Assembly (NCBI RefSeq): GCF_006345805.1
Contig: NW_021835067.1
Coordinates: 1 to 43,692 of the forward strand
Origin: Octopus sinensis
Lineage: Eukaryota
Reading direction: 5' to 3'
Length of the DNA stretch: 43,692 bases
Below are positions 1 to 39,160 of the stretch, piece by piece (within the stretch, counting starts at the first letter, position 1; each line of letters opens with the position of its first letter). The notes under the pieces were generated by a model, which made no database searches, had not been told where the DNA came from, and worked only from the letters and a program-made list of their open reading frames with translations. The position numbers were made by a program, and so were the translations under genes.

Positions 1-375
1 TTAGCACGCCAGGCGAATTGCTTCGCGGTATTTCGTCTGCCGCTACGTTCTGAGTTCAAATTCCGCTGAGGTCGACTTTGCCTTTCGTCCTTTCGGGGTC
101 GATTAAATAAGTACCAGTTACGCACTGGGGTCGATATAATCGACTTAATTCGTTTGTCTGTCCCTGTTTGCCCTCTCTGTGTCTAGCTCCTTGTGGGTAG
201 TAATGAAATAGGTATTTCTTCTGTCGCTGCGTTCTGAGTCAAAATTCCACCGAGGTCGACTTTGCTTTTCATCCTTTCGAGATTGATAAATTAAATACCA
301 GTTGCATACTGGGGTCGATCTAATCAACTGGCGCCCTCCCTAAAAAATTTGGGCCTTGTGCCTACAGTAAAATTT
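1..375 (+). mobile_element. tRNA-derived SINE, family M (Meta/MESC-like central domain), dimeric copy truncated by the window start
   Basis: B-box GAGTTCAAATTCC, then core GTCGACTTTGCCTTTCATCCTTTCGGGGTCGAT...AGTACCAG. The module starting GGTATTT occurs at 28 and 211 (183-bp period). Many copies elsewhere in the window. Confidence 0.85.
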
Positions 376-3570: not shown

Positions 3571-3782
3571 TTTCAGGTTTTGGCATAAGGCCAGCAATTA
3601 CGAGGAAGTGAGTATGTCTATTACATGGACCCCAGTACTCAACTGGTACTTATTTTATCGGCCCCAAAAGGAGGAAAGACAACATATACCGCGGCGGAAT
3701 CTGAACAATGAGCATAAAGACGGACGAAGTGCCGCTAAGCATTTTGCTGGTCGCACTAAAGATTCTTCCAGCTCGCTGCCTA
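3571..3782 (-). mobile_element. SINE family M, diverged monomer
   Basis: Reverse complement of the M head (GGCAGCGAGCTGG), core and tail. Confidence 0.75.
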
Positions 3783-3881: not shown

Positions 3882-4192
3882 GTGGAGGCGCAATGGCTCA
3901 GTGGTTACGGTAGTGGACTCGCGGTCGGAGAATCGTGGTTTCGATTCCCAGACCGGGTATTGTGTGTGTTTATTGAGCGAAAACACCTAAAAGCACCACG
4001 AGGCTCCGACAGGGAGCGGTGGTGACCCTTGTTGTACTCTTTCGCCCAACTTTCTCTCACTCTTTCTTCCTGTTTCTTGAGTAACGCTGCGATTGACTGG
4101 CGTCCTGTCCAGCTGAAGGAACACATACGCCACAGAAACCGGCAAACCGGGCCCATGAACCTAGCTAGGCTTGAAAAGGACGCATAAAAAAA
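3882..4192 (+). mobile_element. full-length tRNA-derived V-domain-like SINE with poly(A) tail and 9-bp TSD
   Basis: A box TGGCTCAGTGG, B box GTTTCGATTCC, V-domain-like GCGATTGACTGGCGTCCTGTCCAG, A-tail. ATCAGAATA at both 3873-3881 and 4193-4201. Confidence 0.85.
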
Positions 4193-5207
4193 ATCAGAAT
4201 AAATGCATTTATTTCTGAGATCCCCTTCGAACATAATCGTCCAAAGACTCCTTGAAAGTTCTTCAATAAATATGAAAACATCAGTCATGTTTGGAAACAA
4301 CTGAGAGAAATGTAATGGTTTGCCAGTGATTATTACTTTCTCACAAGGCCTTATCCGAAGCTGCAGGAAAATATAATCCAACTCACCGACTCCATTAGCA
4401 AAAGGCATAGTATTGCTCTCATAACCAACTTGACCTGTACATGAAAATGGTTGAGGAATACTGGTTTCTAGCATGACCATATTCTCTATTAGTTTAATTC
4501 ATGTATACGCTGATAGAAGATTCCATTTACTTCTTCCCAACTTTTTTTTTCTTGGAAATTGTTAAAAAATGTGACGAATACATCGCATGTTTGGAATCGA
4601 ACCCACTTTATAACCATCTTCGTCATGCCAACAGTTTTCCGCCCAGATAACTATGTGAGCATCTTTATGTCCGTTTTAAAATATCTCTACTAACTTCTAA
4701 CACTTAAATACTACTTGCTTCTGGTAATCGATGAATGTTCGAGGTTTCCTTTCGCGTTTGCGTGATCAGATATGACAGTTGCTAGAGTAATTCGATGTCT
4801 TCAAAATATATTTTTCATGTTTGATTCTACAGCTTCAATCCACTCGAAACGGGGATACGAATTTATGTCATGAAATGTTTCGCCGTTATTTTTTTCTTAA
4901 GAGAAACAACATTGTTGAAACTAAACAAAAAAATAAAATAAAATAAGACAAAAATTTCCACACCATCCTAGTGCAAACACTCATGTAGATCTTCTAATGG
5001 AACTCCATGGAGAATAAATACACGTGCCCTTCCTTCAATAAATCTGCCACAAAAAAAGCTGCAGCGGACGTTTTAGGAGATTCACGCCATACTACGATTA
5101 GATGAGTGCTTACAAAATCATTCCTGGTACTTCTAGTCAAGGTGCATTAGAGTATATTGTAGTTAAATGTTGGCAGCTGGTGATTTGCAATTAAAAACTC
5201 AAAGGCA

Positions 5208-7939: not shown

Positions 7940-8515
7940 AAATTTTGGCAAAAAGCCCGGCATTTCAGGGAACGGGTTAAGTCGATCACATTGACCCCAG
8001 TAGTACCAAACTGATACTTATTTTATCGACTCCGAAAGAATGAAAGCAAAAGTCGATCTCGGCAGAATTTAAACTCAGAACGTAATGACGGACGAAATGC
8101 CGCTAAGAATTTTGTCCGACGTGCAAACGATCCTTTTCTACTATAGGCACAAGGCTTAAAATTTTAGGGGAAGGGACTAGTCATTTACATTGACCCCAGT
8201 GTTTCACTGGTACTTAATTTATCGAGCACGAAAGGATGAAAGAAGAAGTCGACCTCGGCGGAATTTTGACTCGGAACTTAGCGACGGGTGAAACACCTAT
8301 TTCTTTACTACGCACAAGGGGACAAACAAGGACAGACAAACGGATTAAGTCGATTATATCGACACCAGTGCGTAACTAGTACTTATTTAATCGATCACGA
8401 AACGATGAAAGGCAAAGTCGACTTTGGCGGAATTTGAACTCAGAACGTAGCGGCAGACAAAATACTGCTAAGCATTTCGCCCGGCGTGCTAACGTTTCTG
8501 CCAGCTCGCCGTCTT
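7940..8515 (-). mobile_element. cluster of three SINE M units
   Basis: Reverse-complement M cores; an intact head GCGAGCTGGCAGAAACGTTAGC ends near 8512. Confidence 0.85.
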
Positions 8516-8539
8516 ATGTTACTTTTTAATATTAGTCTG

Positions 8540-9385
8540 ATTCTATTTCGTCTGTCTTTACGTTCTGAGTTCAAATTCCGCCGGGGTCGACTTAGCCTTT
8601 CATCCTTTCGGGTCGATAAATTAAATACCAGTTACGTAATGGGGGATGATCTAATCGACTGGCACCTTACCCCCAATATTTCGGGACTTTTGCCTAGAAC
8701 AGAAATGAATGCAAATCTGACTCTAAAGCGGCGAGTGGCAGAAACATTACCATGCCGGACTAAGTGCTTAGCAGCTTTTCATACACTAGAATAAGCGGCG
8801 AGCTGGCAGAAACGGTAGCACGCCGGGCGAAATGCTTAGCGGTATTTCGTCTGCCGTTACGTTCTGAGTTCAAATTCCGCCGAGGTCAACTTTGCCTTTC
8901 ATCCTTTCGGGTCGATAAATTAAGAACCAGTTACGCACTGGGGTCGATTTAATCGACTTAATCCATTTGTCTGTCCTTGTTTGTCCCCTCTGTATTTAGC
9001 CCCTTGTGGGTAGTAAACAAATAGGTATTTCGTCTGTCGTTACGTTCTGAGTTCAAATTCCGCCGAGGTCGACTTTACCTTTTATCCTTTCAGGGTCGTT
9101 CAATTAAGTACCAGTTACGCAAATGGGGGTCGATGTAATCGACTTAATCCCTTTGTCTGTCCTTGTTTAGCCGCTTGTGAGCAATAAAGAAATAAGAAAC
9201 GTTAGTACACCGAGCAGAGAGCTCGGTGGTATTTCGTGTAACTTTACTTTCTAAGTTGAAATCCTACCGGAGCCTACTTTGCCTTCCATCCTTTTAGGGT
9301 CAATAAAATAAATTCCAGTTGAACACTGAGGGTCGATTTAATCGACTCACGTCATTTCCCGAAATTACTGGCCTTGTGCCAAAAT
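8540..9385 (+). mobile_element. cluster of about four SINE M units
   Basis: Head at 8793, module starts at 8841 and 9024 (183-bp period), and degenerate units at 8540-8705 and 9200-9385. Confidence 0.85.
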
Positions 9386-11458: not shown

Positions 11459-12229
11459 TATATAATGTATATATTTACATATATATATATGTGTGTGTGT
11501 GTGGTGTGTGTGTGTGCGTGTGTGTGTGTGTGTGTGTATCCGGTAGTTTAAAAATAAAATACCAACTATTTCCTATTATATATAAGTCTTCAATAAACAA
11601 TATTATTATTTCAAAGTTTTTCTTAAACATTGATTAAATTTTCCCCATCTGACCTTTCCTTGTCTTCTCTCTTGTCTTCCCATGTTTTCTTTTCATTCGC
11701 AAACTTTAGTTAATTATTCTTTTGTTTTCTTTTGTTTTCTCTTTTTTTTTGTACTTTTATTATTCTTATTGTTTTTTTCTGTTGTTTTTGTTGTTGCTTT
11801 CTTTTAAATGGGTGGAGTTTTGTTGGCTTCATTCCCGGCTACAAGGACCACTCAATATATTTGGTTGAGATGCCAGCAAAGATCAGAGGTGATCAATTTC
11901 GTCTATTACTGTTTCGAAACTGTATCTTAATTGTCGTATCGATTTTCTTTTCTTCTTTTTTCGTGATATTTGCGTATTTGTGTGTGTGTGTGTGTGTATG
12001 TGTGCGGTTTTCCGTCTTGGACGAGTACGTAAATGCGAATATGTATGCCTCTGTATATATGTGTGTTTGTTATTCTTCGATTGAACTGAGAATGGTAACG
12101 GTAAAGAAGAATATGAAGGAGAAGAAACTTTCATGAAACGACCCAGGTGAAGCTTCTTTACTTGTAATGCAATCATTTGTTCCACTGTTATAAAACTGTC
12201 TGATTTATATAAATCGATTTGCGAAGAAG

Positions 12230-12259
12230 TGTATCTCTTACTGTGTCACTTGTTGCTGT

Positions 12260-12299
<40 letters not shown>

Positions 12300-12522
12300 A
12301 ATGATGATGATGATGATGATGGTGATGATGACGATAATAATGATGATGATGTTGATGATTGAGATAGGAATAACAATGATCGCGATGACGACGGCGATGA
12401 TGATTATGATGATGATGATGATGATGATGATGTTGTTGATGGTGGTGGTGATGATTGAGATAAGAATAATAACAATCATCACTACCATCATCAACAACAT
12501 CATCATCATCATCATCATCATC

Positions 12523-12573
<51 letters not shown>

Positions 12574-12748
12574 GTCGTCGTCGTCGTCATCGCGATCATT
12601 GTTATTCCTATCTCAATCATCACCATCATCATCATTATTATCGTCATCATCACCATCATCATCATCATCAGCAGCAGCAGCAACAACAACAACAGCAACA
12701 AGTGACACAGTAAGAGATACATGATGATGCTGTTGTTGTTTTGGTCCG

Positions 12749-12781
<33 letters not shown>

Positions 12782-13014
12782 CGATTAATGATGATGATAG
12801 TGATGATTGAGATAAGAATAACAATGATCGCCATGATAATTATGATGATGATGATGATGATGGTAGTGATGCTGATTGAGATAAGAATAATAACGATGAT
12901 GATGATGATGCTGTTGTTGTTTTGGTCCATGATGATGATGATGATGATGACGACGACGACGACGACGACGATGATGATGATGATGATGATGATGATGACG
13001 ACGACGACGACGAC

Positions 13015-13048
<34 letters not shown>

Positions 13049-13050
13049 TT
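12230..13050. repeat. composite trinucleotide repeat [(GTT),(GCT),(ATG),(ATC),(GAC)] containing a ~490-bp foldback
   Basis: The unique anchor TGTATCTCTTACTGTGTCACTTG at 12230 recurs inverted, ending at 12721. The motif GATTGAGATA(G/A)GAATAA recurs several times. Confidence 0.9.
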
Positions 13051-14094
13051 GTTTTGTTCCATGTCTGCTACGATCAAAGATATCGCAGTCGTGACCATTC
13101 CATTTTTTTTTTTGGGTATTTGTTATTTGTTATCTTTTTTTCATTCAGATAATTTGTATCTAGGACAACATTATCCAATTATTCAACGAACCGTTCCTTT
13201 ATTCTAAAATGGTAACCTATAATATCAAGTAAATATTTGACTGCTATTTCCAGCATAATTAAAACTTAGCACGTGGAGATTCTTTCTTTGTGCCTATTGG
13301 CAAACAGTCAATATTGAGTTCTCCATACATATCTGTATGATCTTAATGTCAATGTAGTGAGGGCATGTATGCGTGTGTGTGCGTGTGTGTATGTGTGTGT
13401 GTGTGTGTATGTGTGTGTGTGCGTGTACTTATTTGAGCTTGCGTGCTTTGCAACAGCAAGACATAGTTTGGCGTTGACCTGCTAAGTGGAAAGATATTGA
13501 TGTATGTGTGTGTGTATGTGCGTGTGTGTATGTATGTGTGTATGTGCGCGTGTGTCCGATGATGACTTAGGCAGCCGGAAGTTCGAGGTCTCTGTCAACA
13601 ATGTTATTGTAAAAAACTTGTATAAAGTATAAAAATCTAAAGTATAGAAAAACCCATCAAATCAACGTGAAATTGTTTTATTATAACTGAATAACACACA
13701 AAAAATTATGCACACACACACACACACGCGCGCTCACACATATGTATATATACATATGGTAGTAATTTGCGGTCACAGTCAGTTCAACTTGTCATGCTAC
13801 CAAAATTAACGGATATTATCACGTGCTCTTGCAGGAAAAAAGAAAGTAAACTATGAGCGTTAATCTTAATTTTAATTTTAGTTTAATTTTATTAATATTT
13901 CTTTTCTCTTTACATATTCCATTTTAGTATATATTTTTCATAAGGTTTTTCAAAAACCGAAACGTAAAATGAAAATTAAAATGTACCCAATTGTAAGAAA
14001 GTTGCATTTTCGTTCTTGTTTTTCATAAATATCTACTTTCTCGTGTGTTACCTCTACACACCTTTTCATATATATATATATATATATTATATAT

Positions 14095-14589
14095 AATGAT
14101 AAATCTCAGAGCGAGTTATCTACAGTAGCGGTAACACATCGTGACGCATATTTGCCATTTGAATATGGCTAACCCCTAAGGGTGGATGCTACTGTAGTTT
14201 GAAGATATCTCCTCCAGCTGGCTATAGACACACTATCTGTGTCCTCTCAGTATTTGTGAAGGGAAGACATCCTCCCCGTCTTCAACTCATGATACACACG
14301 GACTCGAGTTTCAAGGTGTTTACCTCTCATCAGCGTGTGACAATCATGGTTGTCGACGAGAAGTCAGCTCCCTTCACAAATACATATACTTTTTCCAGTG
14401 TCGATTGACACTGATATTGAAAAAGTGAAATCAAACAATGATAAATCTCAGAGCGAGTTATAAACAGTAGCGGTAACACATCGTGACGGATATTTGCCAT
14501 TTGAATATGGCTAACCCCTAAGGATGGATGCTACTGTAGTTTGTAGCCCCAGGAAGATATCTCCTCCAGCTGGCTATAGACACACTATC
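14095..14589 (-). mobile_element. retrozyme-like element A: 1.4 head-to-tail copies of a 342-352 bp HHR-bearing monomer
   Basis: 14095-14237 is repeated at 14437-14589 (342-bp period; the second copy has a 10-nt insert). It contains a canonical HHR, and its 3' end abuts (TA)n. Confidence 0.8.
14283..14352 (-). ncRNA. type I hammerhead ribozyme with canonical core and GUC cleavage site
   Basis: Minus strand: CACACG-CUGAUGA-GAGGU(AAAC)ACCUU-GAA-ACUCGAGU-C-CGUGUG. Stem I extends through an internal loop (CATGAT/ATCATG, CAAC/GTTG). Confidence 0.9.
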
Positions 14590-14857
14590 CCTTTTTTTTA
14601 TTTTTTTATAATTTTCTTCTTATTATTTTTTTAACTATCAAAACGTATTAGAAAGTTTAATATAATATAATAAGTAAAAAGTTTAATATAATATAATAAG
14701 TGAAATTTGATTTAATCCTAAATCTAATTTTTCCCTGTAAGCTTGGATTTACTCCCTAATATTATCATATATATATATATATATAATTTAATAAATAAAA
14801 TTATATGCATACATACATACATATATGTACGTACCTACATCTATATGTATATATACA

Positions 14858-22666: not shown

Positions 22667-23143
22667 GGTATGTGTATGTATATAGACAAACATATGCTAG
22701 AAGTAGATCACATACGATCTAACTACCAAGAAAGAATGTACTCTAGAGAAAATTCAGCGAACACCAGAACATAGGCGGACAAGACATGAAAATTATATAA
22801 AAATCAAGAATTAATCGTATACCGGTTTCGTCTATCACCTAATAAATTACTTACGCAATCCACCGTCCGTAAATGGCTGTCCACGTTGTGGTATTCTAGC
22901 CCTAAAATATACACATGTATTAGAATTTTCTCTAATAAACTTAATAGTCGTTAGTAAATGACAACAAAGCAACAATAGAATGTAAAGGATATTTTATGTA
23001 AAGTAAAAAGAATGTCAAGATCATTTATAATTTTAAAAATTATTGTTATAATTGCTCTCTGAATCTCTCTCACTCGCACCAGACTCGCGCACACCATATC
23101 TTGTTGACGCAATCGTCGATTCACAAGCGCTCGTAGACAGACT

Positions 23144-23531
23144 TACTCTTTTACTTGTTTCAGTCATTTGACTGTGGCCATGCTGGTGCACCGCCTTTAT
23201 TCGAGCAAATCGACGCTAGGACTTATTTTTTGTAAGTCTAGTACTTATTCTATCGGTCTCTTTTGCCGAACCGCTAAGTTACGGGGACGTAGACACACCA
23301 GTATCGGTTGTCACGCGATGCTGTGGGGACAAGCACAGACACTCAAACAAATACACATATACATATATGCGACGGGCTTCTTTCAGTTTCCGTCTACCAA
23401 ATGCACTCACAAGGTTTTGGTTGGCCCGAGGCTATAGTAGAAGACAATTGCCCAAGGTGCCATACAGTGGGACTGAACTCGGAACCATGTGGTTGGTAAC
23501 CAAGCTACTTACCACACAACCACTTCTACGC
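23144..23531 (-). mobile_element. near full-length CORE-type tRNA SINE (family C)
   Basis: Minus strand: tRNA-like head (GTGGTAAGTAGC..., GAGTTCAGTCCC), CORE-like GCACCTTGGGCAATTGTCTT, internal (TA/TG)n, and a tail ending AAACAAGTAAAAGAGTA. Confidence 0.85.
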
Positions 23532-24236
23532 ATATGTAGACTTGTAGATTTCTTTTTAAAAACATGTCTAGAGTTGTTTGCTTAGAAGAAGCTATTTTCG
23601 TTCTCTATAAATTTCTCGGAAACACGTAGAAGCATTTGTTATCGTAGAAGAAACTTCTGCACTCCGTTCAAAATTTTGATCTTTATATTCATTATAAAAC
23701 AAAACTCGTAAAACGGGTGTCTAATAAAGTGAGTCCTCGTACAGTGAGATATTACTCTGTGTATGTGTGCGTGTGTGTGTTTATATATATACATGTATGT
23801 ATGTATGTATATATATATATATATATATATATACATACACATATTCGTTTTGGGATCATCAGTACTTTATTATCTCCCCTTCTTTCTAGCCCTCCTGTGA
23901 AACTTTTTTCTCCTAACCAGTCCCCATGTTTAATAACTAAAGCCACATGTTTCTTTACTTTCTCTCTATTTATGTTCTCTTACTCCTTTCCGTTGAAGAG
24001 CGCAGGCTCGAAGCGAAAAAGACTTTCTCCTTTTCCCGAGCGTCAAACTAATATACCTGTTTGTTGTTCAAACTCCTATCTACGTCTTTTTTCTGTACAT
24101 TATATATTTATGAATTATTATTATTATTATATAAATATATATATGAAATTTGTTTACGGTAAATGTCCTGAATATGCAACGTGCGTAGCGATATATTAAA
24201 TGTTTATAAATTCGATCCAAGGGTTATTGTTGTTAG

Positions 24237-26225: not shown

Positions 26226-26906
<681 letters not shown>

Positions 26907-28309: not shown

Positions 28310-28827
28310 ATTATTTTATCTTAGTGAAAAGGTGGTGGGCTGACAGAATCGTCAGCCCACCGGGTGAAATGTTTACCGGTATTTCGCCCGTCGCTACATT
28401 CTGAGTTCAAATTCCGTGGAGGTCGACTCAGCCTTTCATCCTTTCGGAGACGGTAAATTAAGTACCAGTCGAGTGCTGGGGTCGATGTGATCGAGTGCAC
28501 CCCGCCCCACAAACCACCACCACTACAAAAATCTAGACCTTTCACCTATAATAGAAAGGATTATTTTATCTTAGTGAAAAGGTGGTGGGCTGACAGAATC
28601 GTCAGCCCACCGGGTGAAATGTTTACCGGTATTTCGCCCGTCGCTACATTCTGAGTTCAAATTCCGTGGAGGTCGACTCAGCCTTTCATCCTTTCGGAGA
28701 CGGTAAATTAAGTACCAGTCGAGTGCTGGGGTCGATGTGATCGAGTGCACCCCGCCCCACAAACCACCACCACTACAAAAATCTAGACCTTTCACCTATA
28801 ATAGAAAGGATTATTTTATCTTAGTGA
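28310..28827 (+). repeat. exact 250-bp tandem duplication of a variant SINE M unit
   Basis: 28321-28570 appears identical to 28571-28820, and the two 74-aa ORFs in the track are identical. A diverged third M unit follows to ~29030. Confidence 0.9.
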
Positions 28828-30418: not shown

Positions 30419-30931
30419 GAGTGAGAGAGCAGTACATGCCATCAAAGTGACACTGGGGTACAAATATACGAAACCCAGTATACCCATCATGACTACCTGT
30501 CTGATAAGGATACACTAAGTACATGCATTACAACCATATCTGCGAGACATGGTGATCTCATATCAAGATAAACAGCACATGACCTTGCAGAATTTTTTTT
30601 CTGGTTGAGTAGCCAATCCCGCTCAAAAGGTCCCTGAATAAGGGTTGTTTCCAGTGGTGAATTATTCAAACCACAAAGAATCCCTCTCAACACATGGCTA
30701 TGATGCTCCCCCACTACTTCTGCTCGTGATCAGAGATGCACATATTGTCAGCCACTAAAGGACATGCTCAACTGGTTAAGGTCAAGCAACTGACAAGCAA
30801 ATCTGTGGTATTGAGCAGAATATTTGCTGTAGCCCATCTTTTATACCGAGACAAAACAATGTACATGATAACACTTTCAATCTGTTAAGATCAGAAGCCA
30901 TGAGAGCCACTGCTTGGTACTACATCAGGGC

Positions 30932-30933
<2 letters not shown>
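30419..30933. mobile_element. (TTA)n-flanked element, copy 2 (515 bp, two internal deletions)
   Basis: Colinear with 26226-26781, same ends, same orientation. Confidence 0.85.
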
Positions 30934-30967
<34 letters not shown>

Positions 30968-30981
30968 CATTATTATTATTA

Positions 30982-31014
<33 letters not shown>

Positions 31015-36201: not shown

Positions 36202-36237
<36 letters not shown>

Positions 36238-36409
36238 ATATATATATATATAATGGTTGTATACTGTCAACTTAACGTGACGGTAGGGGATTACACCACC
36301 GCTGTTCAGCCCTAGGAGGCATCGACGCTTCCTGTTGCCTTCGACACACTTACTGTGCCCTTATATATTTACGAAGGTGAGACAAATACCCCTAACAGTT
36401 AGGCCTGTA

Positions 36410-36456
36410 TCTAGAGACACGCATATTTCAGGGTCCTTGCCCTTCATCGGTCTAGG
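36410..36456 (-). ncRNA. type I hammerhead, family C (CCGAUGA variant core), copy 1
   Basis: Minus strand: CUAGA-CCGAUGA-AGGG(CAAGGA)CCCU-GAA-AUAUGCGUGU-C-UCUAG. Confidence 0.65.
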
Positions 36457-36715
36457 GTAGCATTAGTCTGCTACCTGCGAATATTTGTCACGATTTCGTA
36501 AATATATATATCTAATTTTCAGTGAAGTTTATTCGCTGATTACCAAAATCAGAAATATTAAATTTCTAAATATCTCATAGAGATATGTACGGTGGTGAGG
36601 CGATATAATGGTTGTATACTGTCAACTTAACGTGACAGTAGGGGATTACATCATCGCTGTTTAGCCCTGTTTACGAAATCGAGACAAATATTCACAGCTA
36701 GCAGGCTAATGCTAC

Positions 36716-36762
36716 TCTAGACCGATGAAGGGCAAGGACCCTGAAACATGCGTGTCTCTAGA
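36716..36762 (+). ncRNA. type I hammerhead, family C (CCGAUGA variant core), copy 2
   Basis: UCUAGA-CCGAUGA-AGGG(CAAGGA)CCCU-GAA-ACAUGCGUGU-C-UCUAGA; predicted cleavage after C36756. Confidence 0.75.
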
Positions 36763-36963
36763 TGCAGGCCTAGCTGTTGGGGGTATTTGTCTCCCATTCG
36801 TAAATATATAAGGACACAGTAAGTGTGTCGAAGCCAACAGGAAGCGTCGATGCTTCCTAGGGCTGAACAGCGGTGGTGTAATCCCCTACTGTCACGTTAA
36901 GTTGACAGTATACAACCATTATATCGCCCCACCACCGTACATATCTCTATGAGATATTTAGAA

Positions 36964-37047
<84 letters not shown>

Positions 37048-37782: not shown

Positions 37783-39160
37783 TAAAGCGGCGTTAGCACG
37801 CTGGGCGAAATGCTTAGCGGTATTTCGTCTGCCGCTACGTTCTGAGTTCAAATTCCGCCGAGGTCGACTTTGCCTTTCATCCTTTCGGGGTCGATAAATT
37901 AAATTACCAGTTACGCACTGGGGTCGATATCATCGACTTAATACCTATGTCTGTCCTTGTTTGTCCCCTCTGTGTTTAGCCCCTTGTGGGTAATAAAGAA
38001 ATAGGTATTTCGTCTGCCGCTACGTTCTGAGTTCAAATACCGCCGGGGTCGACTTTGCCTTTCATACTTTCGGGGTCGATTAAATAAGTACCAGTTACGT
38101 ACTGGGGTCGATATAATCGACTTAATCCGTTTGTCTGTTCTTGTTTGTCCTCTTTATGTTTAGCCCTTTGTGGGTAGTAAAGAAATAGGTATTTCGCCCG
38201 TCGCTACGTTCTAAGTTCAAATTTAGTCATGGTCGACTTTGCCATTCATCCTTTCGGGGTCGATAAATTATGTACCAGTTGCGTACTGGGGTCGATCTAA
38301 TTGACTGGTCCCCTTTCCAAAAAATTCGGGCCTTGTACTTAAAGTAGAAAAGAATATATTTAAAGGCGGCGAGCTGGCAGAAACGTTAGCGCGCCGTGCG
38401 AAATGTCTTAGTAGTAAGTGTATTCGGCTCACGATCATAAAGTTGTGAGATCGATTTCTGCCCGAGTCCAGTAAGCTGGCAAAAATGAGTTATAAATGTA
38501 TTTTAAGGGACCCGCCTTGTCGCAATCTGTGTCACGCTGAGGCGGCGAGCTGGTAGAAACGTTAGCACGCCGGGCGAAATGTTTAGCGGTATTTCATCTG
38601 CCGCTACGTTCTGAGTTCAAATTCCGCTGAGGTTGACTTTGCCTTTCATCCTTTCGGGGTCGATTAAATAAGTACCAGTTACGCATGGGGTCGATATAAT
38701 CGAGTTAATCCGTTTGTCTGTCCTTGTTTGTCCTCTCTGTGTTTAGCCTTTTGTGAGTAGTAAAGAAATAAGTATTTCGTCTGCTGTTACGTTCTTAGCA
38801 CAAATTCAGCCGAGGCTGACTTTGCCTTTCATCCTTTCGGGGTCGATAAATAAAGTACCAGTTACGCACTGGGGTCGATCTAATCGACTGGCCTTCTCCC
38901 CAAAAATAAAATTGCGGGCCTTGTGCCTAAAGTAGAAAAGATTATTGTAAGCCTGTGAGCTGGCAGAATACTTAGTACGCTGGGCGAAATGCTTAGCGGA
39001 ATTTCGTCTGTCTTTACGTTCTGAGTTCAAATTCTGCCGAGGTCGACTTTGCCTTCGATCCTTTCGGGGTCGATGAATTAAGAACCAGTTGCGTACTGGG
39101 ATTGATCTAATCGACTGGGACCTTCCCTAAAAATTTTGGGCCTTGTGCCTAGAGTAAAAA
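37783..39160 (+). mobile_element. array of SINE M multimers (trimer 37783-38355, lone head ~38365-38410, dimer 38540-38946, monomer 38950-39160)
   Basis: Module starts at 37819, 38004, 38188 and at 38588, 38771 (183-185 bp period). Confidence 0.9.

What the first reader, a model, noticed from the sequence alone, without database searches (positions are those of the whole stretch)
14095..14589. Retrozyme-like element: ~350-bp tandem monomer with a perfect type I hammerhead ribozyme
Seen: a 342-bp-period direct repeat (full monomer probably 352 bp) with no ORF of note. The minus strand has a complete hammerhead core: CUGAUGA, a 5-bp stem II, GAAA, palindromic stem III ACUCGAGU, a GUC site, and stem I CACACG/CGUGUG extended by an internal loop. 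The ribozyme is enclosed by a perfect 15-bp stem, GTATTTGTGAAGGGA (14250-14264) / TCCCTTCACAAATAC (14369-14383). The 3' end runs into (TA)n. Known: non-LTR retrozymes of cnidarians, bivalves and amphibians are 150-400 bp HHR-bearing tandem repeats processed to circular RNAs. Inference: this is a cephalopod retrozyme reverse-transcribed from a circle (more than one lap, less than two), probably by Penelope-like machinery. I know of no description of this family.
Basis: partly seen in the sequence, partly recalled or inferred. Interest (0 to 1): 0.92.

Follow-up and report, generated by a model that had tools for sequence, protein, structure and literature searches.

The report
Octopus retrozyme with hammerhead ribozyme
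This is a 495-bp non-coding mobile-element copy in an octopus genome that carries a near-canonical self-cleaving hammerhead ribozyme; it is real, but it is a new family of a kind already known (animal "retrozymes" that ride on Penelope-like retrotransposons), so it is not a surprise.

Summary
Window 14095-14589 is 1.4 units of a 342/352-bp head-to-tail repeat. It has no meaningful ORF. On the minus strand at 14295-14339 sits one complete type I hammerhead (HHR) that caps a 134-nt hairpin. A strict descriptor finds it once, against 0.005 expected per window. Rfam Hammerhead_1 aligns end to end but scores 28.4 bits, below the 34-bit cutoff. "Perfect" is overstated, because the 10.1-11.1 pair is G•U rather than G-C. 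Helix III is stable only as a dimer.

The host is an Octopus. A second, diverged but colinear relative lies at 36248-36968, with a 355-bp unit and 54% identity (z=16). It consists of two head-to-head partial copies inside a (TA)n tract. Between the two families, helix I, helix II and the outer stem keep pairing through compensatory changes. The second family's core is mutated (CCGAUGA).

The copies show a 3' end abutting (TA)n, 5' truncation, and partial-tandem and inverted layouts. No RT/EN ORF was found nearby. This fits a non-autonomous, Penelope-like-element-dependent non-LTR retrozyme.

With a single HHR, locus 1 cannot release a unit-length RNA. It is most likely an immobile daughter copy. 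A circular template is plausible but not shown. Verdict: new member of a known kind, moderate-to-low interest.

The parts
14095..14589 (-). Locus 1 (family A): 1.4 head-to-tail units of a 342/352-nt non-coding element. The 5' end (14589) is truncated inside the unit. The 3' end (14095) abuts (TA)n.
   Evidence: nhmmer profile covers 14590-14092
14437..14589 (-). Upstream partial unit (153 nt). It keeps the ancestral 10-nt block CCUGGGGCUA.
   Evidence: family B has CCUAGGGC at the same place
14095..14237 (-). Downstream copy of the same segment (143 nt). It has a 10-nt deletion and 4 substitutions relative to the upstream copy.
14295..14339 (-). Type I hammerhead: helix I 6 bp, core CUGAUGA, helix II 5 bp (G•U at 10.1-11.1) with loop AAAC, GAAA, palindromic helix III ACUCGAGU, C17 at 14301.
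14300..14301 (-). Predicted self-cleavage site (3' of C17 at 14301, 5' of C1.1 at 14300).
   Evidence: read from the sequence; activity not tested
14250..14383 (-). 134-nt hairpin of about 42 bp that extends helix I. The outer 15 bp are perfect. It is more stable on the ribozyme strand (-64.2) than on the complement (-54.5 kcal/mol).
14068..14094 (.). (TA)n tract at the 3' junction of locus 1 (presumed target).
36248..36668 (-). Locus 2 (family B), left array: about 1.19 units of a 355-nt period. Its 3' end sits at a TATAT microhomology with (TA)n, 44 nt short of the full unit end.
36670..36968 (+). Locus 2, right copy: a 0.84-unit, 5'-truncated copy joined head-to-head to the left array (36668|36670). 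Its 3' end abuts (TA)n.
36411..36455 (-). Hammerhead-like motif of B-left: CUAGA-CCGAUGA-AGGG-CAAGGA-CCCU-GAAA-UAUGCGUG-UC-UCUAG (U4->C in the core).
36716..36762 (+). Hammerhead-like motif of B-right, with the same U4->C core and a 6-bp helix I.
   Evidence: not detected by Rfam RF00163
36203..36247 (.). (TA)n flanking locus 2 on the left.
36969..37005 (.). (TA)n flanking locus 2 on the right.

Best explanation
Locus 1 is a daughter copy of a short (about 350 nt), non-coding, hammerhead-bearing retroelement of an Octopus genome. In other words, it is a non-LTR retrozyme, or equivalently a non-autonomous derivative of Penelope-like elements (PLEs).

Inferred life cycle:
1. Master copies arranged as head-to-tail arrays are transcribed on the ribozyme strand.
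2. Two neighbouring hammerheads pair through their palindromic helix III into a double hammerhead and cut after C17. This releases unit-length RNAs that a host RNA ligase may circularise.
3. A PLE reverse transcriptase / GIY-YIG endonuclease nicks a (TA)n tract and primes cDNA synthesis at a defined point of the RNA (the ...AUCAUU end of the unit).
4. It copies more than one unit, from a circle, from a multimer, or by template jumping, and stops early.

The result here is a 5'-truncated 1.4-mer.

Shown: the motif, the repeat geometry, homology with a second family, compensatory changes in the helices, the (TA)n junctions, and the absence of coding capacity.

Inferred: transcription, cleavage, circularisation, and the identity of the mobilising enzyme.

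This locus has only one hammerhead, and its helix III is unstable as a monomer. It could at most be cut once, and only with a partner RNA. It cannot produce a unit-length or circular RNA by itself.
For: Motif:
- One strict HHR hit, against 0.005 expected.
- Full-length RF00163 alignment at 28.4 bits.
- The architecture matches the 'canonical metazoan type I HHR' described in PMC4209133: helix I of 6 bp, helix II of 4-5 bp, and a short palindromic helix III.

Dimer design:
- The helix III hairpin is unfavourable at +2.9 kcal/mol, but its self-duplex is -10.7.
- Family B gives +1.7/+3.6 against -12.5 with a different sequence.

Family:
- The A and B units are colinear, with 54% identity and z = 16 against shuffles.
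- The hammerhead block is among the best conserved.
- Helix I changed on both sides at 5 of 6 pairs, and the outer stem at 3 of 11. Helix II has one both-sided and one one-sided change (plus direct reading).
- Both families keep a hairpin of about 42 bp (z = -8.7, -6.2, -4.8) that is more stable on the ribozyme strand.
- The circular unit RNA folds at z = -8.5 / -7.9.

Retro-insertion signatures:
- The 3' ends of A and B-right fall at the same unit position (within 3 nt) and abut (TA)n.
- The chance of a (TA)>=6 run within 8 nt of a random junction is 0.039.
- The 5' ends are truncated at arbitrary unit positions.
- Locus 2 is a head-to-head pair with outward 3' ends.
- PLE literature describes (TA)n targets, partial tandems and inverted 5'-truncated copies (PMC8557442).

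Non-autonomy: no Pfam domain in any ORF of >=70 codons between about 11.7 and 19.1 kb.

Context:
- PLEs are present in Octopus genomes (PMC13282606, PMC8967140).
- Monomer derivatives are common among retrozyme families, and those families are related to PLE pLTRs (bioRxiv 10.64898/2026.07.22.740005).
Against: - Only two loci were available. No further copy was found in the rest of the window or in 62 kb of O. bimaculoides sequence, so copy number and the existence of true tandem arrays are unknown.
- No array with two or more same-strand hammerheads was seen.
- The G•U at 10.1-11.1 (A-U in family B) departs from the conserved G-C and may lower activity.
- Family B carries U4->C in both copies, which should cripple catalysis. 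Core conservation across the family is therefore imperfect.
- No target-site duplication could be defined.
- No similarity to an octopus PLE pLTR could be tested.
- No expression or cleavage data exist.
Confidence: 0.75

Rival explanations
1. It is the terminal repeat (pLTR) of a 5'-truncated autonomous Penelope-like element, not a separate non-autonomous element.
For: PLEs carry type I hammerheads in their pLTRs. They form partial tandems and inverted 5'-truncated copies and prefer (TA)n. Retrozyme consensus sequences are sister to PLE pLTRs in Xenopus.
Against: The head-to-tail period is 342-355 bp in two diverged families, so the complete unit is about 350 nt rather than about 3 kb. The unit junction (...ATCATT|GTTTGAT...) joins the 3' end directly to non-coding sequence. 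No RT or GIY-YIG domain was found in ORFs of >=70 codons within about 2.4 kb upstream or 4.5 kb downstream.
Confidence: 0.1
2. It is a piece of hammerhead-bearing satellite DNA that was duplicated locally by DNA-level events (slippage or unequal exchange), with no retrotransposition involved.
For: Classical HHR repeats (newt satellite 2, cave-cricket pDo500) were first described as satellites. Only 1.4 units are present.
Against: Two dispersed loci of diverged families have the same unit 3' terminus abutting (TA)n and arbitrary 5' truncations. One is a head-to-head pair with outward 3' ends. These are marks of target-primed reverse transcription, not of local slippage.
Confidence: 0.07
3. It is a pol III SINE-like retroposon with a hammerhead, like Schistosoma Sm-alpha, mobilised by a LINE.
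For: Similar size (about 340 nt) and dispersed copies. SINEs are very abundant in octopus.
Against: No A or B box matches better than 2 mismatches, and never both in one unit. No tRNA/5S/7SL match in Rfam. There is no poly(A) or LINE-type 3' tail. The partial-tandem and inverted layouts are not typical of SINEs.
Confidence: 0.04
4. It is a chance hammerhead-like motif inside a foldback/MITE-type inverted repeat.
For: The motif sits at the tip of a long inverted repeat. Rfam's gathering threshold is not reached. A genome of 2-3 Gb would hold hundreds of chance descriptor hits at 0.005 per 44 kb.
Against: The motif is conserved, and its three helices covary in a 54%-identical homologue. The palindromic helix III is kept with a different sequence. 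G•U pairs make the ribozyme strand about 4-10 kcal/mol more stable than its complement. The inverted repeat is internal, not terminal.
Confidence: 0.03

Closest known systems
Metazoan non-LTR retrozymes (Cervera & de la Pena 2020, PMC7229834), for example the Mytilus galloprovincialis 350-390-bp repeats
   Same: Type I hammerhead. Unit length inside the 150-450 bp range and close to the mussel unit. Non-coding, GC below 50%, head-to-tail junctions, strongly self-paired unit RNA. Mollusc host that also holds PLEs.
   Different: Only 1.4 units with one ribozyme at locus 1, and opposite-strand copies at locus 2. No array able to release a unit was seen. U11.1 in place of C11.1. The hammerhead caps a hairpin of about 42 bp. 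Expression and circularity are untested.
Hammerheads in the pseudo-LTRs of Penelope-like elements (Cervera & de la Pena 2014, PMC4209133; Craig et al. 2021, PMC8557442)
   Same: Short palindromic helix III implying dimeric action. Partial-tandem and inverted 5'-truncated insertion layouts. (TA)n targets. Pairs of motifs 100-700 bp apart on opposite strands are reported there and seen at locus 2.
   Different: PLE 'min-HHRs' have a long helix II (7-8 bp), a short helix I (4-5 bp) and an extra base before 10.1. This motif has the canonical 6/5-bp helices. The unit is 350 nt with no RT/EN ORF.
Vertebrate non-LTR retrozymes as PLE derivatives, with monomer derivatives (Li, Clavereau & Pollet 2026, bioRxiv 10.64898/2026.07.22.740005)
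   Same: Locus 1 fits their 'monomer derivative' category (offspring that cannot transpose). The co-occurrence with PLEs matches.
   Different: Their survey covers vertebrates, three insects and a coral, but no mollusc. Homology of this unit to an octopus pLTR was not testable here.
Rfam RF00163 Hammerhead_1 (newt, Schistosoma and cricket seeds)
   Same: Full-length alignment 1-45/45 with all model pairs standard. Same palindromic helix III pattern (ACNCGNGU).
   Different: 28.4 bits, below the 34-bit gathering score. Family B is not detected at all.
L001 = JGI metagenome contig Ga0049110_10014201
   Same: Head-to-tail repeat with one type I hammerhead per unit and the identical GAAACUCGAGUC helix III.
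   Different: 662-bp unit, 52% GC, canonical G10.1-C11.1, passes the Rfam threshold (34.9 bits). No similarity outside the 12-nt core block. Unknown host.

Membership tests
Hammerhead ribozyme, type I (Rfam RF00163) | Conserved core CUGANGA ... GAAA ... UH, with three helices and an open helix I | tested here: met
   Locus 1: core CUGAUGA / GAAA / GUC. Helices I, II and III are 6, 5 and 2-3 bp. Family B: the core is CCGAUGA, so the feature is not met there.
Hammerhead ribozyme, type I (Rfam RF00163) | Conserved G10.1-C11.1 pair | tested here: not met
   G10.1•U11.1 in family A and A10.1-U11.1 in family B. Its conservation in canonical HHRs is stated in PMC4209133.
Hammerhead ribozyme, type I (Rfam RF00163) | Score at or above the curated gathering threshold (34 bits) | tested here: not met
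   28.4 bits, E = 1.1e-5 on 91 nt. No hit in the gathering scan or in the 701-nt scan.
Hammerhead ribozyme, type I (Rfam RF00163) | Mg2+-dependent self-cleavage 3' of position 17 | not testable with these tools
   Needs in vitro transcription of monomer and dimer constructs.
Metazoan non-LTR retrozyme | Head-to-tail repeat unit of about 150-450 bp carrying a type I hammerhead | tested here: met
   Period 342/352 (A) and 355 (B). The range is taken from PMC7229834.
Metazoan non-LTR retrozyme | Two or more same-strand hammerheads in tandem, so that a unit-length RNA can be released (the 'active' definition of Li et al. 2026) | tested here: not met
   Locus 1 has one HHR. Locus 2 has two, on opposite strands and with a mutated core. 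These loci are monomer derivatives. Arrays elsewhere in the genome could not be searched.
Metazoan non-LTR retrozyme | No protein-coding capacity, and GC below 50% | tested here: met
   Longest frame is 81 codons with no Pfam hit and no homologue. GC is 0.43 and 0.40.
Metazoan non-LTR retrozyme | Stable, highly self-paired unit RNA | tested here: met
   Circular fold -122.8 / -128.6 kcal/mol, z = -8.5 / -7.9.
Metazoan non-LTR retrozyme | Many dispersed genomic copies | tested here: inconclusive
   Two loci of two diverged subfamilies in 43.7 kb, but none in 62 kb of O. bimaculoides sequence. No cephalopod genome could be searched.
Metazoan non-LTR retrozyme | [quoted passage not shown] | not testable with these tools
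   No transcriptome access.
Metazoan non-LTR retrozyme | Host genome also holds Penelope-like elements | tested here: met
   From the literature only: PLE families and expansions in O. vulgaris and O. bimaculoides (PMC13282606, PMC8967140).
Autonomous Penelope-like element | ORF with a telomerase-like RT and a GIY-YIG endonuclease between the pLTRs | tested here: not met
   No Pfam domain in 20 ORFs tested, including all non-repetitive ORFs of >=70 codons between about 11.7 and 19.1 kb. The unit period is about 350 bp.
Autonomous Penelope-like element | Insertion layout: partial tandems, inverted 5'-truncated copies, microsatellite (TA)n targets | tested here: met
   compared with PMC8557442.
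tRNA-type SINE (Sm-alpha-like) | Internal pol III A and B boxes, and a LINE-type or A-rich 3' tail | tested here: not met
   Only isolated 2-mismatch box matches and no tail. No small-RNA family match.

The most novel reading that the evidence does not exclude
In this octopus lineage the selected feature may no longer be self-cleavage. It may instead be the hairpin of about 42 bp that the hammerhead caps. The hairpin, the dimer-forming helix III and a non-canonical U11.1 are all kept by compensatory change between two families that are only 54% identical, yet one family has lost the essential U4. On this reading the element would be a retrozyme lineage drifting away from ribozyme dependence. 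The long double-stranded RNA would then serve recognition by the PLE enzyme, or act as an ADAR or small-RNA substrate in an animal known for heavy RNA editing.
Probability: 0.12. Interest if true: 0.55.

Novelty: new member of a known kind. Interest (0 to 1): 0.33.

Why it matters
It adds cephalopods to the hosts of hammerhead-bearing non-LTR retrozymes. It also gives a clean, small example of PLE-style insertion by such an element: a (TA)n target, a fixed 3' end, 5' truncation, a partial tandem and a head-to-head pair. This supports the recent proposal that animal retrozymes are non-autonomous PLE derivatives.

It shows that standard Rfam annotation at gathering thresholds misses this family, so cephalopod hammerhead counts are underestimates.

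It provides a natural U11.1 variant and a natural U4C variant that could be tested side by side.

None of this changes the current picture of retrozymes.

Tried and rejected
- ORF trick to find other copies. I searched the 69-aa frame of the element against the 5.8-billion-protein set and found no homologue.
- Exact look-ups of three window ORFs returned nothing. The window's contig carries no such called genes and its source record could not be named.
- The 197-codon ORF 3908-4498(-) has no homologue.
- DNA pattern scans:
  - IMG/VR gave 0 hits.
  - GTDB genomes gave 0 hits.
  - JGI metagenomes gave one unrelated true hammerhead repeat (L001) and two bacterial chance matches, but not the window itself.
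- The 76-kb O. bimaculoides locus L004 holds no copy.
- The MAFFT alignment of the hairpin domains slips register after GAAA, because helix III differs in length. I therefore did not use it for pair counting and read the helices directly.
- RNAcofold of two family A hammerheads prefers other pairings and was uninformative. I used duplex energies of helix III instead.
- I considered that 14590-14766 might belong to the insertion, because similar (TA)n edges occur at 14063 and 14762 (family D3). I rejected this because family B shows that the unit ends at 14589, inside the unit, and nothing in 14590-14766 matches the unit.
- I looked for a second ribozyme or known RNA in the rest of the unit and found none.
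Full report
**1. What is in the sequence**

Window 14095-14589 holds a direct repeat. Positions 14095-14204 match 14437-14546 at a spacing of 342, and 14201-14237 match 14553-14589 at a spacing of 352. Read on the minus strand, the locus is a 153-nt segment, then 199 nt of unique sequence, then a 143-nt copy of the first segment. That makes 1.4 head-to-tail units. The two copies differ by four substitutions and one 10-nt indel.

The unique part carries a complete type I hammerhead on the minus strand: CACACG-CUGAUGA-GAGGU-AAAC-ACCUU-GAAA-CUCGAG-UC-CGUGUG, spanning 14339 to 14295. The perfect 15-bp stem at 14250-14264 / 14369-14383 is also right. It is the outer part of a 134-nt hairpin of about 42 bp that continues helix I (dG -64.2 kcal/mol, z = -8.7). 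A (TA)n tract at 14068-14095 touches the 3' end of the element on the ribozyme strand. The longest open frame is 81 codons, with no Pfam match and no homologue.

**2. Is it more than chance?**

I wrote a descriptor requiring helix I of at least 5 bp, helix II of at least 4, helix III of at least 2, and the CUGANGA, GAAA and UH boxes. It gives one hit in the window on both strands, at this site. The expectation from 200 first-order Markov randomisations is 0.005.

Rfam's gathering scan of the window finds nothing, and a 701-nt scan at E <= 10 also misses the motif. When only 91 nt are given, so that the filters relax, RF00163 Hammerhead_1 aligns end to end (1-45 of 45). Every model pair is standard, the score is 28.4 bits against a 34-bit cutoff, and E = 1.1e-5.

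At 0.005 per 44 kb, a 2-3 Gb genome would still hold hundreds of chance hits. The motif alone is therefore not enough, and the context below decides.

**3.

The hammerhead is not perfect. Position 11.1 is U, so the 10.1-11.1 pair is G•U. Cervera and de la Pena describe G10.1-C11.1 as highly conserved in canonical hammerheads (PMC4209133).

Helix III is the palindrome ACUCGAGU. As a hairpin it is 2 bp plus a tetraloop and is unfavourable (+2.9 kcal/mol). As a self-duplex it is 8 bp and -10.7 kcal/mol. This is the usual design of metazoan type I hammerheads, which act as double hammerheads when two copies are close (PMC4209133; axolotl retrozymes in PMC7229834).

Locus 1 has one hammerhead. It cannot be cut at both ends of a unit, and it would need a partner RNA even for one cut.

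**4. Host**

The window is microsatellite-rich, AT-rich eukaryotic DNA. A peptide read from one of its SINE-like repeats hits two Octopus bimaculoides proteins at 70% and 95% identity. The 76-kb O. bimaculoides locus fetched through one of them (chromosome CM046612.1) shares many interspersed repeats with the window at 80-93% identity. The host is an Octopus, so 'cephalopod' is confirmed.

**5. A second, related locus**

A weak 57-nt similarity to 14213-14270 turned up twice, in opposite orientation, near 36.3 and 36.8 kb (score 40, against a shuffle maximum of 28). This region is a second element at 36248-36968, lying inside a (TA)n tract (36203-36252 and 36967-37005).

Its inverted arms are 36248-36502 / 36670-36924 (255 nt, 94%) and 36559-36668 / 36859-36968 (110 nt, 96%). 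They resolve into two parts:
- a left array on the minus strand of about 1.19 units of a 355-nt period;
- a right copy on the plus strand of 0.84 unit.

The two are joined head to head at 36668|36670, with both 3' ends pointing out into (TA)n.

The 355-nt unit (family B) is colinear with the locus 1 unit (family A). Identity is 54% over 335 aligned positions, and the global score lies 16 standard deviations above dinucleotide shuffles. Family B has CCUAGGGC where the 352-nt form of A has the 10-nt block. The 352 form is therefore ancestral and the 342 copy carries a deletion.

**6. Comparative evidence for the RNA structure**

Family B has a hammerhead-like motif at the homologous place: CUAGA-CCGAUGA-AGGG-CAAGGA-CCCU-GAAA-(C/U)AUGCGUG-UC-UCUAG. 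Comparing A with B:
- Helix I changed on both sides at 5 of 6 pairs while staying paired.
- Helix II has one both-sided and one one-sided change.
- The outer stem changed on both sides at 3 of 11 pairs: G-C to A-U, G-C to A-U, and U-A to C-G (and direct reading).
- Helix III of B (ACAUGCGUGU) differs in sequence from A. It is again unstable as a hairpin (+1.7 / +3.6) and stable as a self-duplex through G•U pairs (-12.5 kcal/mol).
- Both families keep a hairpin of about 42 bp (z = -6.2 and -4.8 for B).
- The ribozyme strand folds better than its complement (-64.2 against -54.5, and -49.7 against -45.5 kcal/mol). This is expected if G•U pairs matter, that is, for a structure used as RNA.
- The circular unit RNA is strongly self-paired (z = -8.5 and -7.9).

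With position 4 of the core relaxed, the descriptor finds exactly these three motifs in the window and none in the O. bimaculoides locus.

Two cautions apply. Both B copies carry U4->C, which by established hammerhead biochemistry should cripple catalysis, and Rfam does not detect B at all. Also, three sequences from two insertion events are a small sample.

**7. How the copies were made**

The 3' ends of A (after ...AUCAUU) and of B-right (after ...GAAAUUUA) fall at the same position of the aligned unit, within 3 nt, and both abut (TA)n. B-left ends 44 nt earlier, at a UAUAU that overlaps the (TA)n. A random junction in this window has a (TA)>=6 run within 8 nt with probability 0.039, so two independent events give about 0.0015.

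The 5' ends are at arbitrary unit positions. Both families show the same unit junction (3' end joined to GUUUGAU... / AUAUUUC...). No target-site duplication can be defined.

These are marks of target-primed reverse transcription. They match what is described for Penelope-like elements: a (TA)n target bias, partial tandems that form pseudo-LTRs, and inverted 5'-truncated copies (PMC8557442). They also match the pairs of hammerheads 100-700 bp apart on opposite strands noted in Schistosoma (PMC4209133).

(TA)n is self-complementary, so both nicked strands could prime on the same RNA end. That would give the head-to-head pair. This is an inference.

The DNA ends are 206 nt away from the cleavage site, so cDNA synthesis did not start at a ribozyme-made 3' end. 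A circular template with site-specific priming, a multimeric read-through transcript, and template jumping between linear units all fit. The data cannot separate them.

**8. What it is not**

It is not an autonomous PLE. The unit is about 350 nt, and no Pfam domain was found in any of 20 ORFs tested, which cover the non-repetitive ORFs of >=70 codons from about 11.7 to 19.1 kb.

It is not a tRNA-type SINE. There are no A/B box pairs, no tail, and no small-RNA match.

It is not a plain local duplication, given the two dispersed loci with retro-insertion marks.

**9. Rough age (inference)**

Assume each locus's copies were identical at insertion. Then 4/143 (A) and 15/255 (B) pairwise differences mean about 0.014 and 0.03 per lineage. 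With the O. vulgaris calibration quoted in PMC13282606 (JC 0.09 at about 25 My and 0.2 at about 56 My), that is a few million years for each. Heterogeneous templates would make these upper bounds.

**10. Comparison with what is known, and novelty**

The class is known. Non-LTR retrozymes are 150-450-bp head-to-tail repeats with type I hammerheads. [quoted passage not shown] A 2026 preprint argues from vertebrate data that they are non-autonomous PLE derivatives. It also notes that monomer derivatives are common and probably immobile.

Octopus genomes hold PLEs. The giant squid genome paper lists 235 Hammerhead_1 loci without comment. My searches found no paper describing retrozymes in cephalopods.

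These loci are therefore a new family of a known kind. The features that stand out are:
- U11.1 shared by both subfamilies;
- the long hairpin capped by the ribozyme;
- a subfamily with a mutated core;
- an unusually clear set of PLE-type insertion marks.

**11. Limits**

No cephalopod genome or transcriptome could be searched with DNA. Copy number, the existence of active arrays, similarity to octopus pLTRs, transcription, cleavage and circularity are all open.

Noticed in passing
window 27-372, 3634-3766, 8002-9139, 37820-38349, 38587-39159: A dispersed SINE-like repeat family, often present as partial tandems spaced about 184 bp apart. Its translation gives a recurrent pseudo-peptide (..TPVxNWYLFxRPRKxERQSRPRxNLNSE..) that matches annotated 'uncharacterized proteins' of Octopus bimaculoides. 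Some octopus gene models therefore contain this repeat.
   Followed up: partly
window 28310-28809: An exact 250-bp x 2 tandem duplication (100% identity) of a segment that contains the same SINE-like repeat. It is either very recent or an assembly artefact.
   Followed up: no
window 3908-4498 (-): An open frame of 197 codons, long for 34%-GC DNA, with no Pfam domain and no homologue. Part of it (3882-4077) matches a repeat in the O. bimaculoides locus at 86%, so it is probably transposon-derived.
   Followed up: partly
window 23143-23539: A repeat of about 400 bp with at least five copies (74-84% identity) in the 76-kb O. bimaculoides locus L004. It is an abundant interspersed family that I did not classify.
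   Followed up: no
L001 1-1275 (JGI metagenome contig Ga0049110_10014201): A head-to-tail repeat of 662 bp with one canonical type I hammerhead per unit (Rfam 34.9 bits, above threshold) and the same GAAACUCGAGUC helix III. It looks like a retrozyme-like array from an unidentified eukaryote in a metagenome.
   Followed up: partly
window 36248-36313 vs 36603-36668, and the arms of locus 2: The differences between copies are mostly transitions. All four in the 66-nt internal repeat are A/G or C/U, and three of them are A-to-G on the ribozyme strand. This could be ordinary mutation bias, or A-to-I editing of the double-stranded RNA template before reverse transcription.
   Followed up: no
window 26736-26830 and 30888-30982: A 95-nt segment, 97% identical between the two sites, that each time leads into a long (ATT)n array. 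It may be a repeat family with a trinucleotide tail.
   Followed up: no
window 12229-13100: About 900 bp of compound trinucleotide arrays (GAT/GAC/ATT/GCT), giving long low-complexity open frames on both strands.
   Followed up: no
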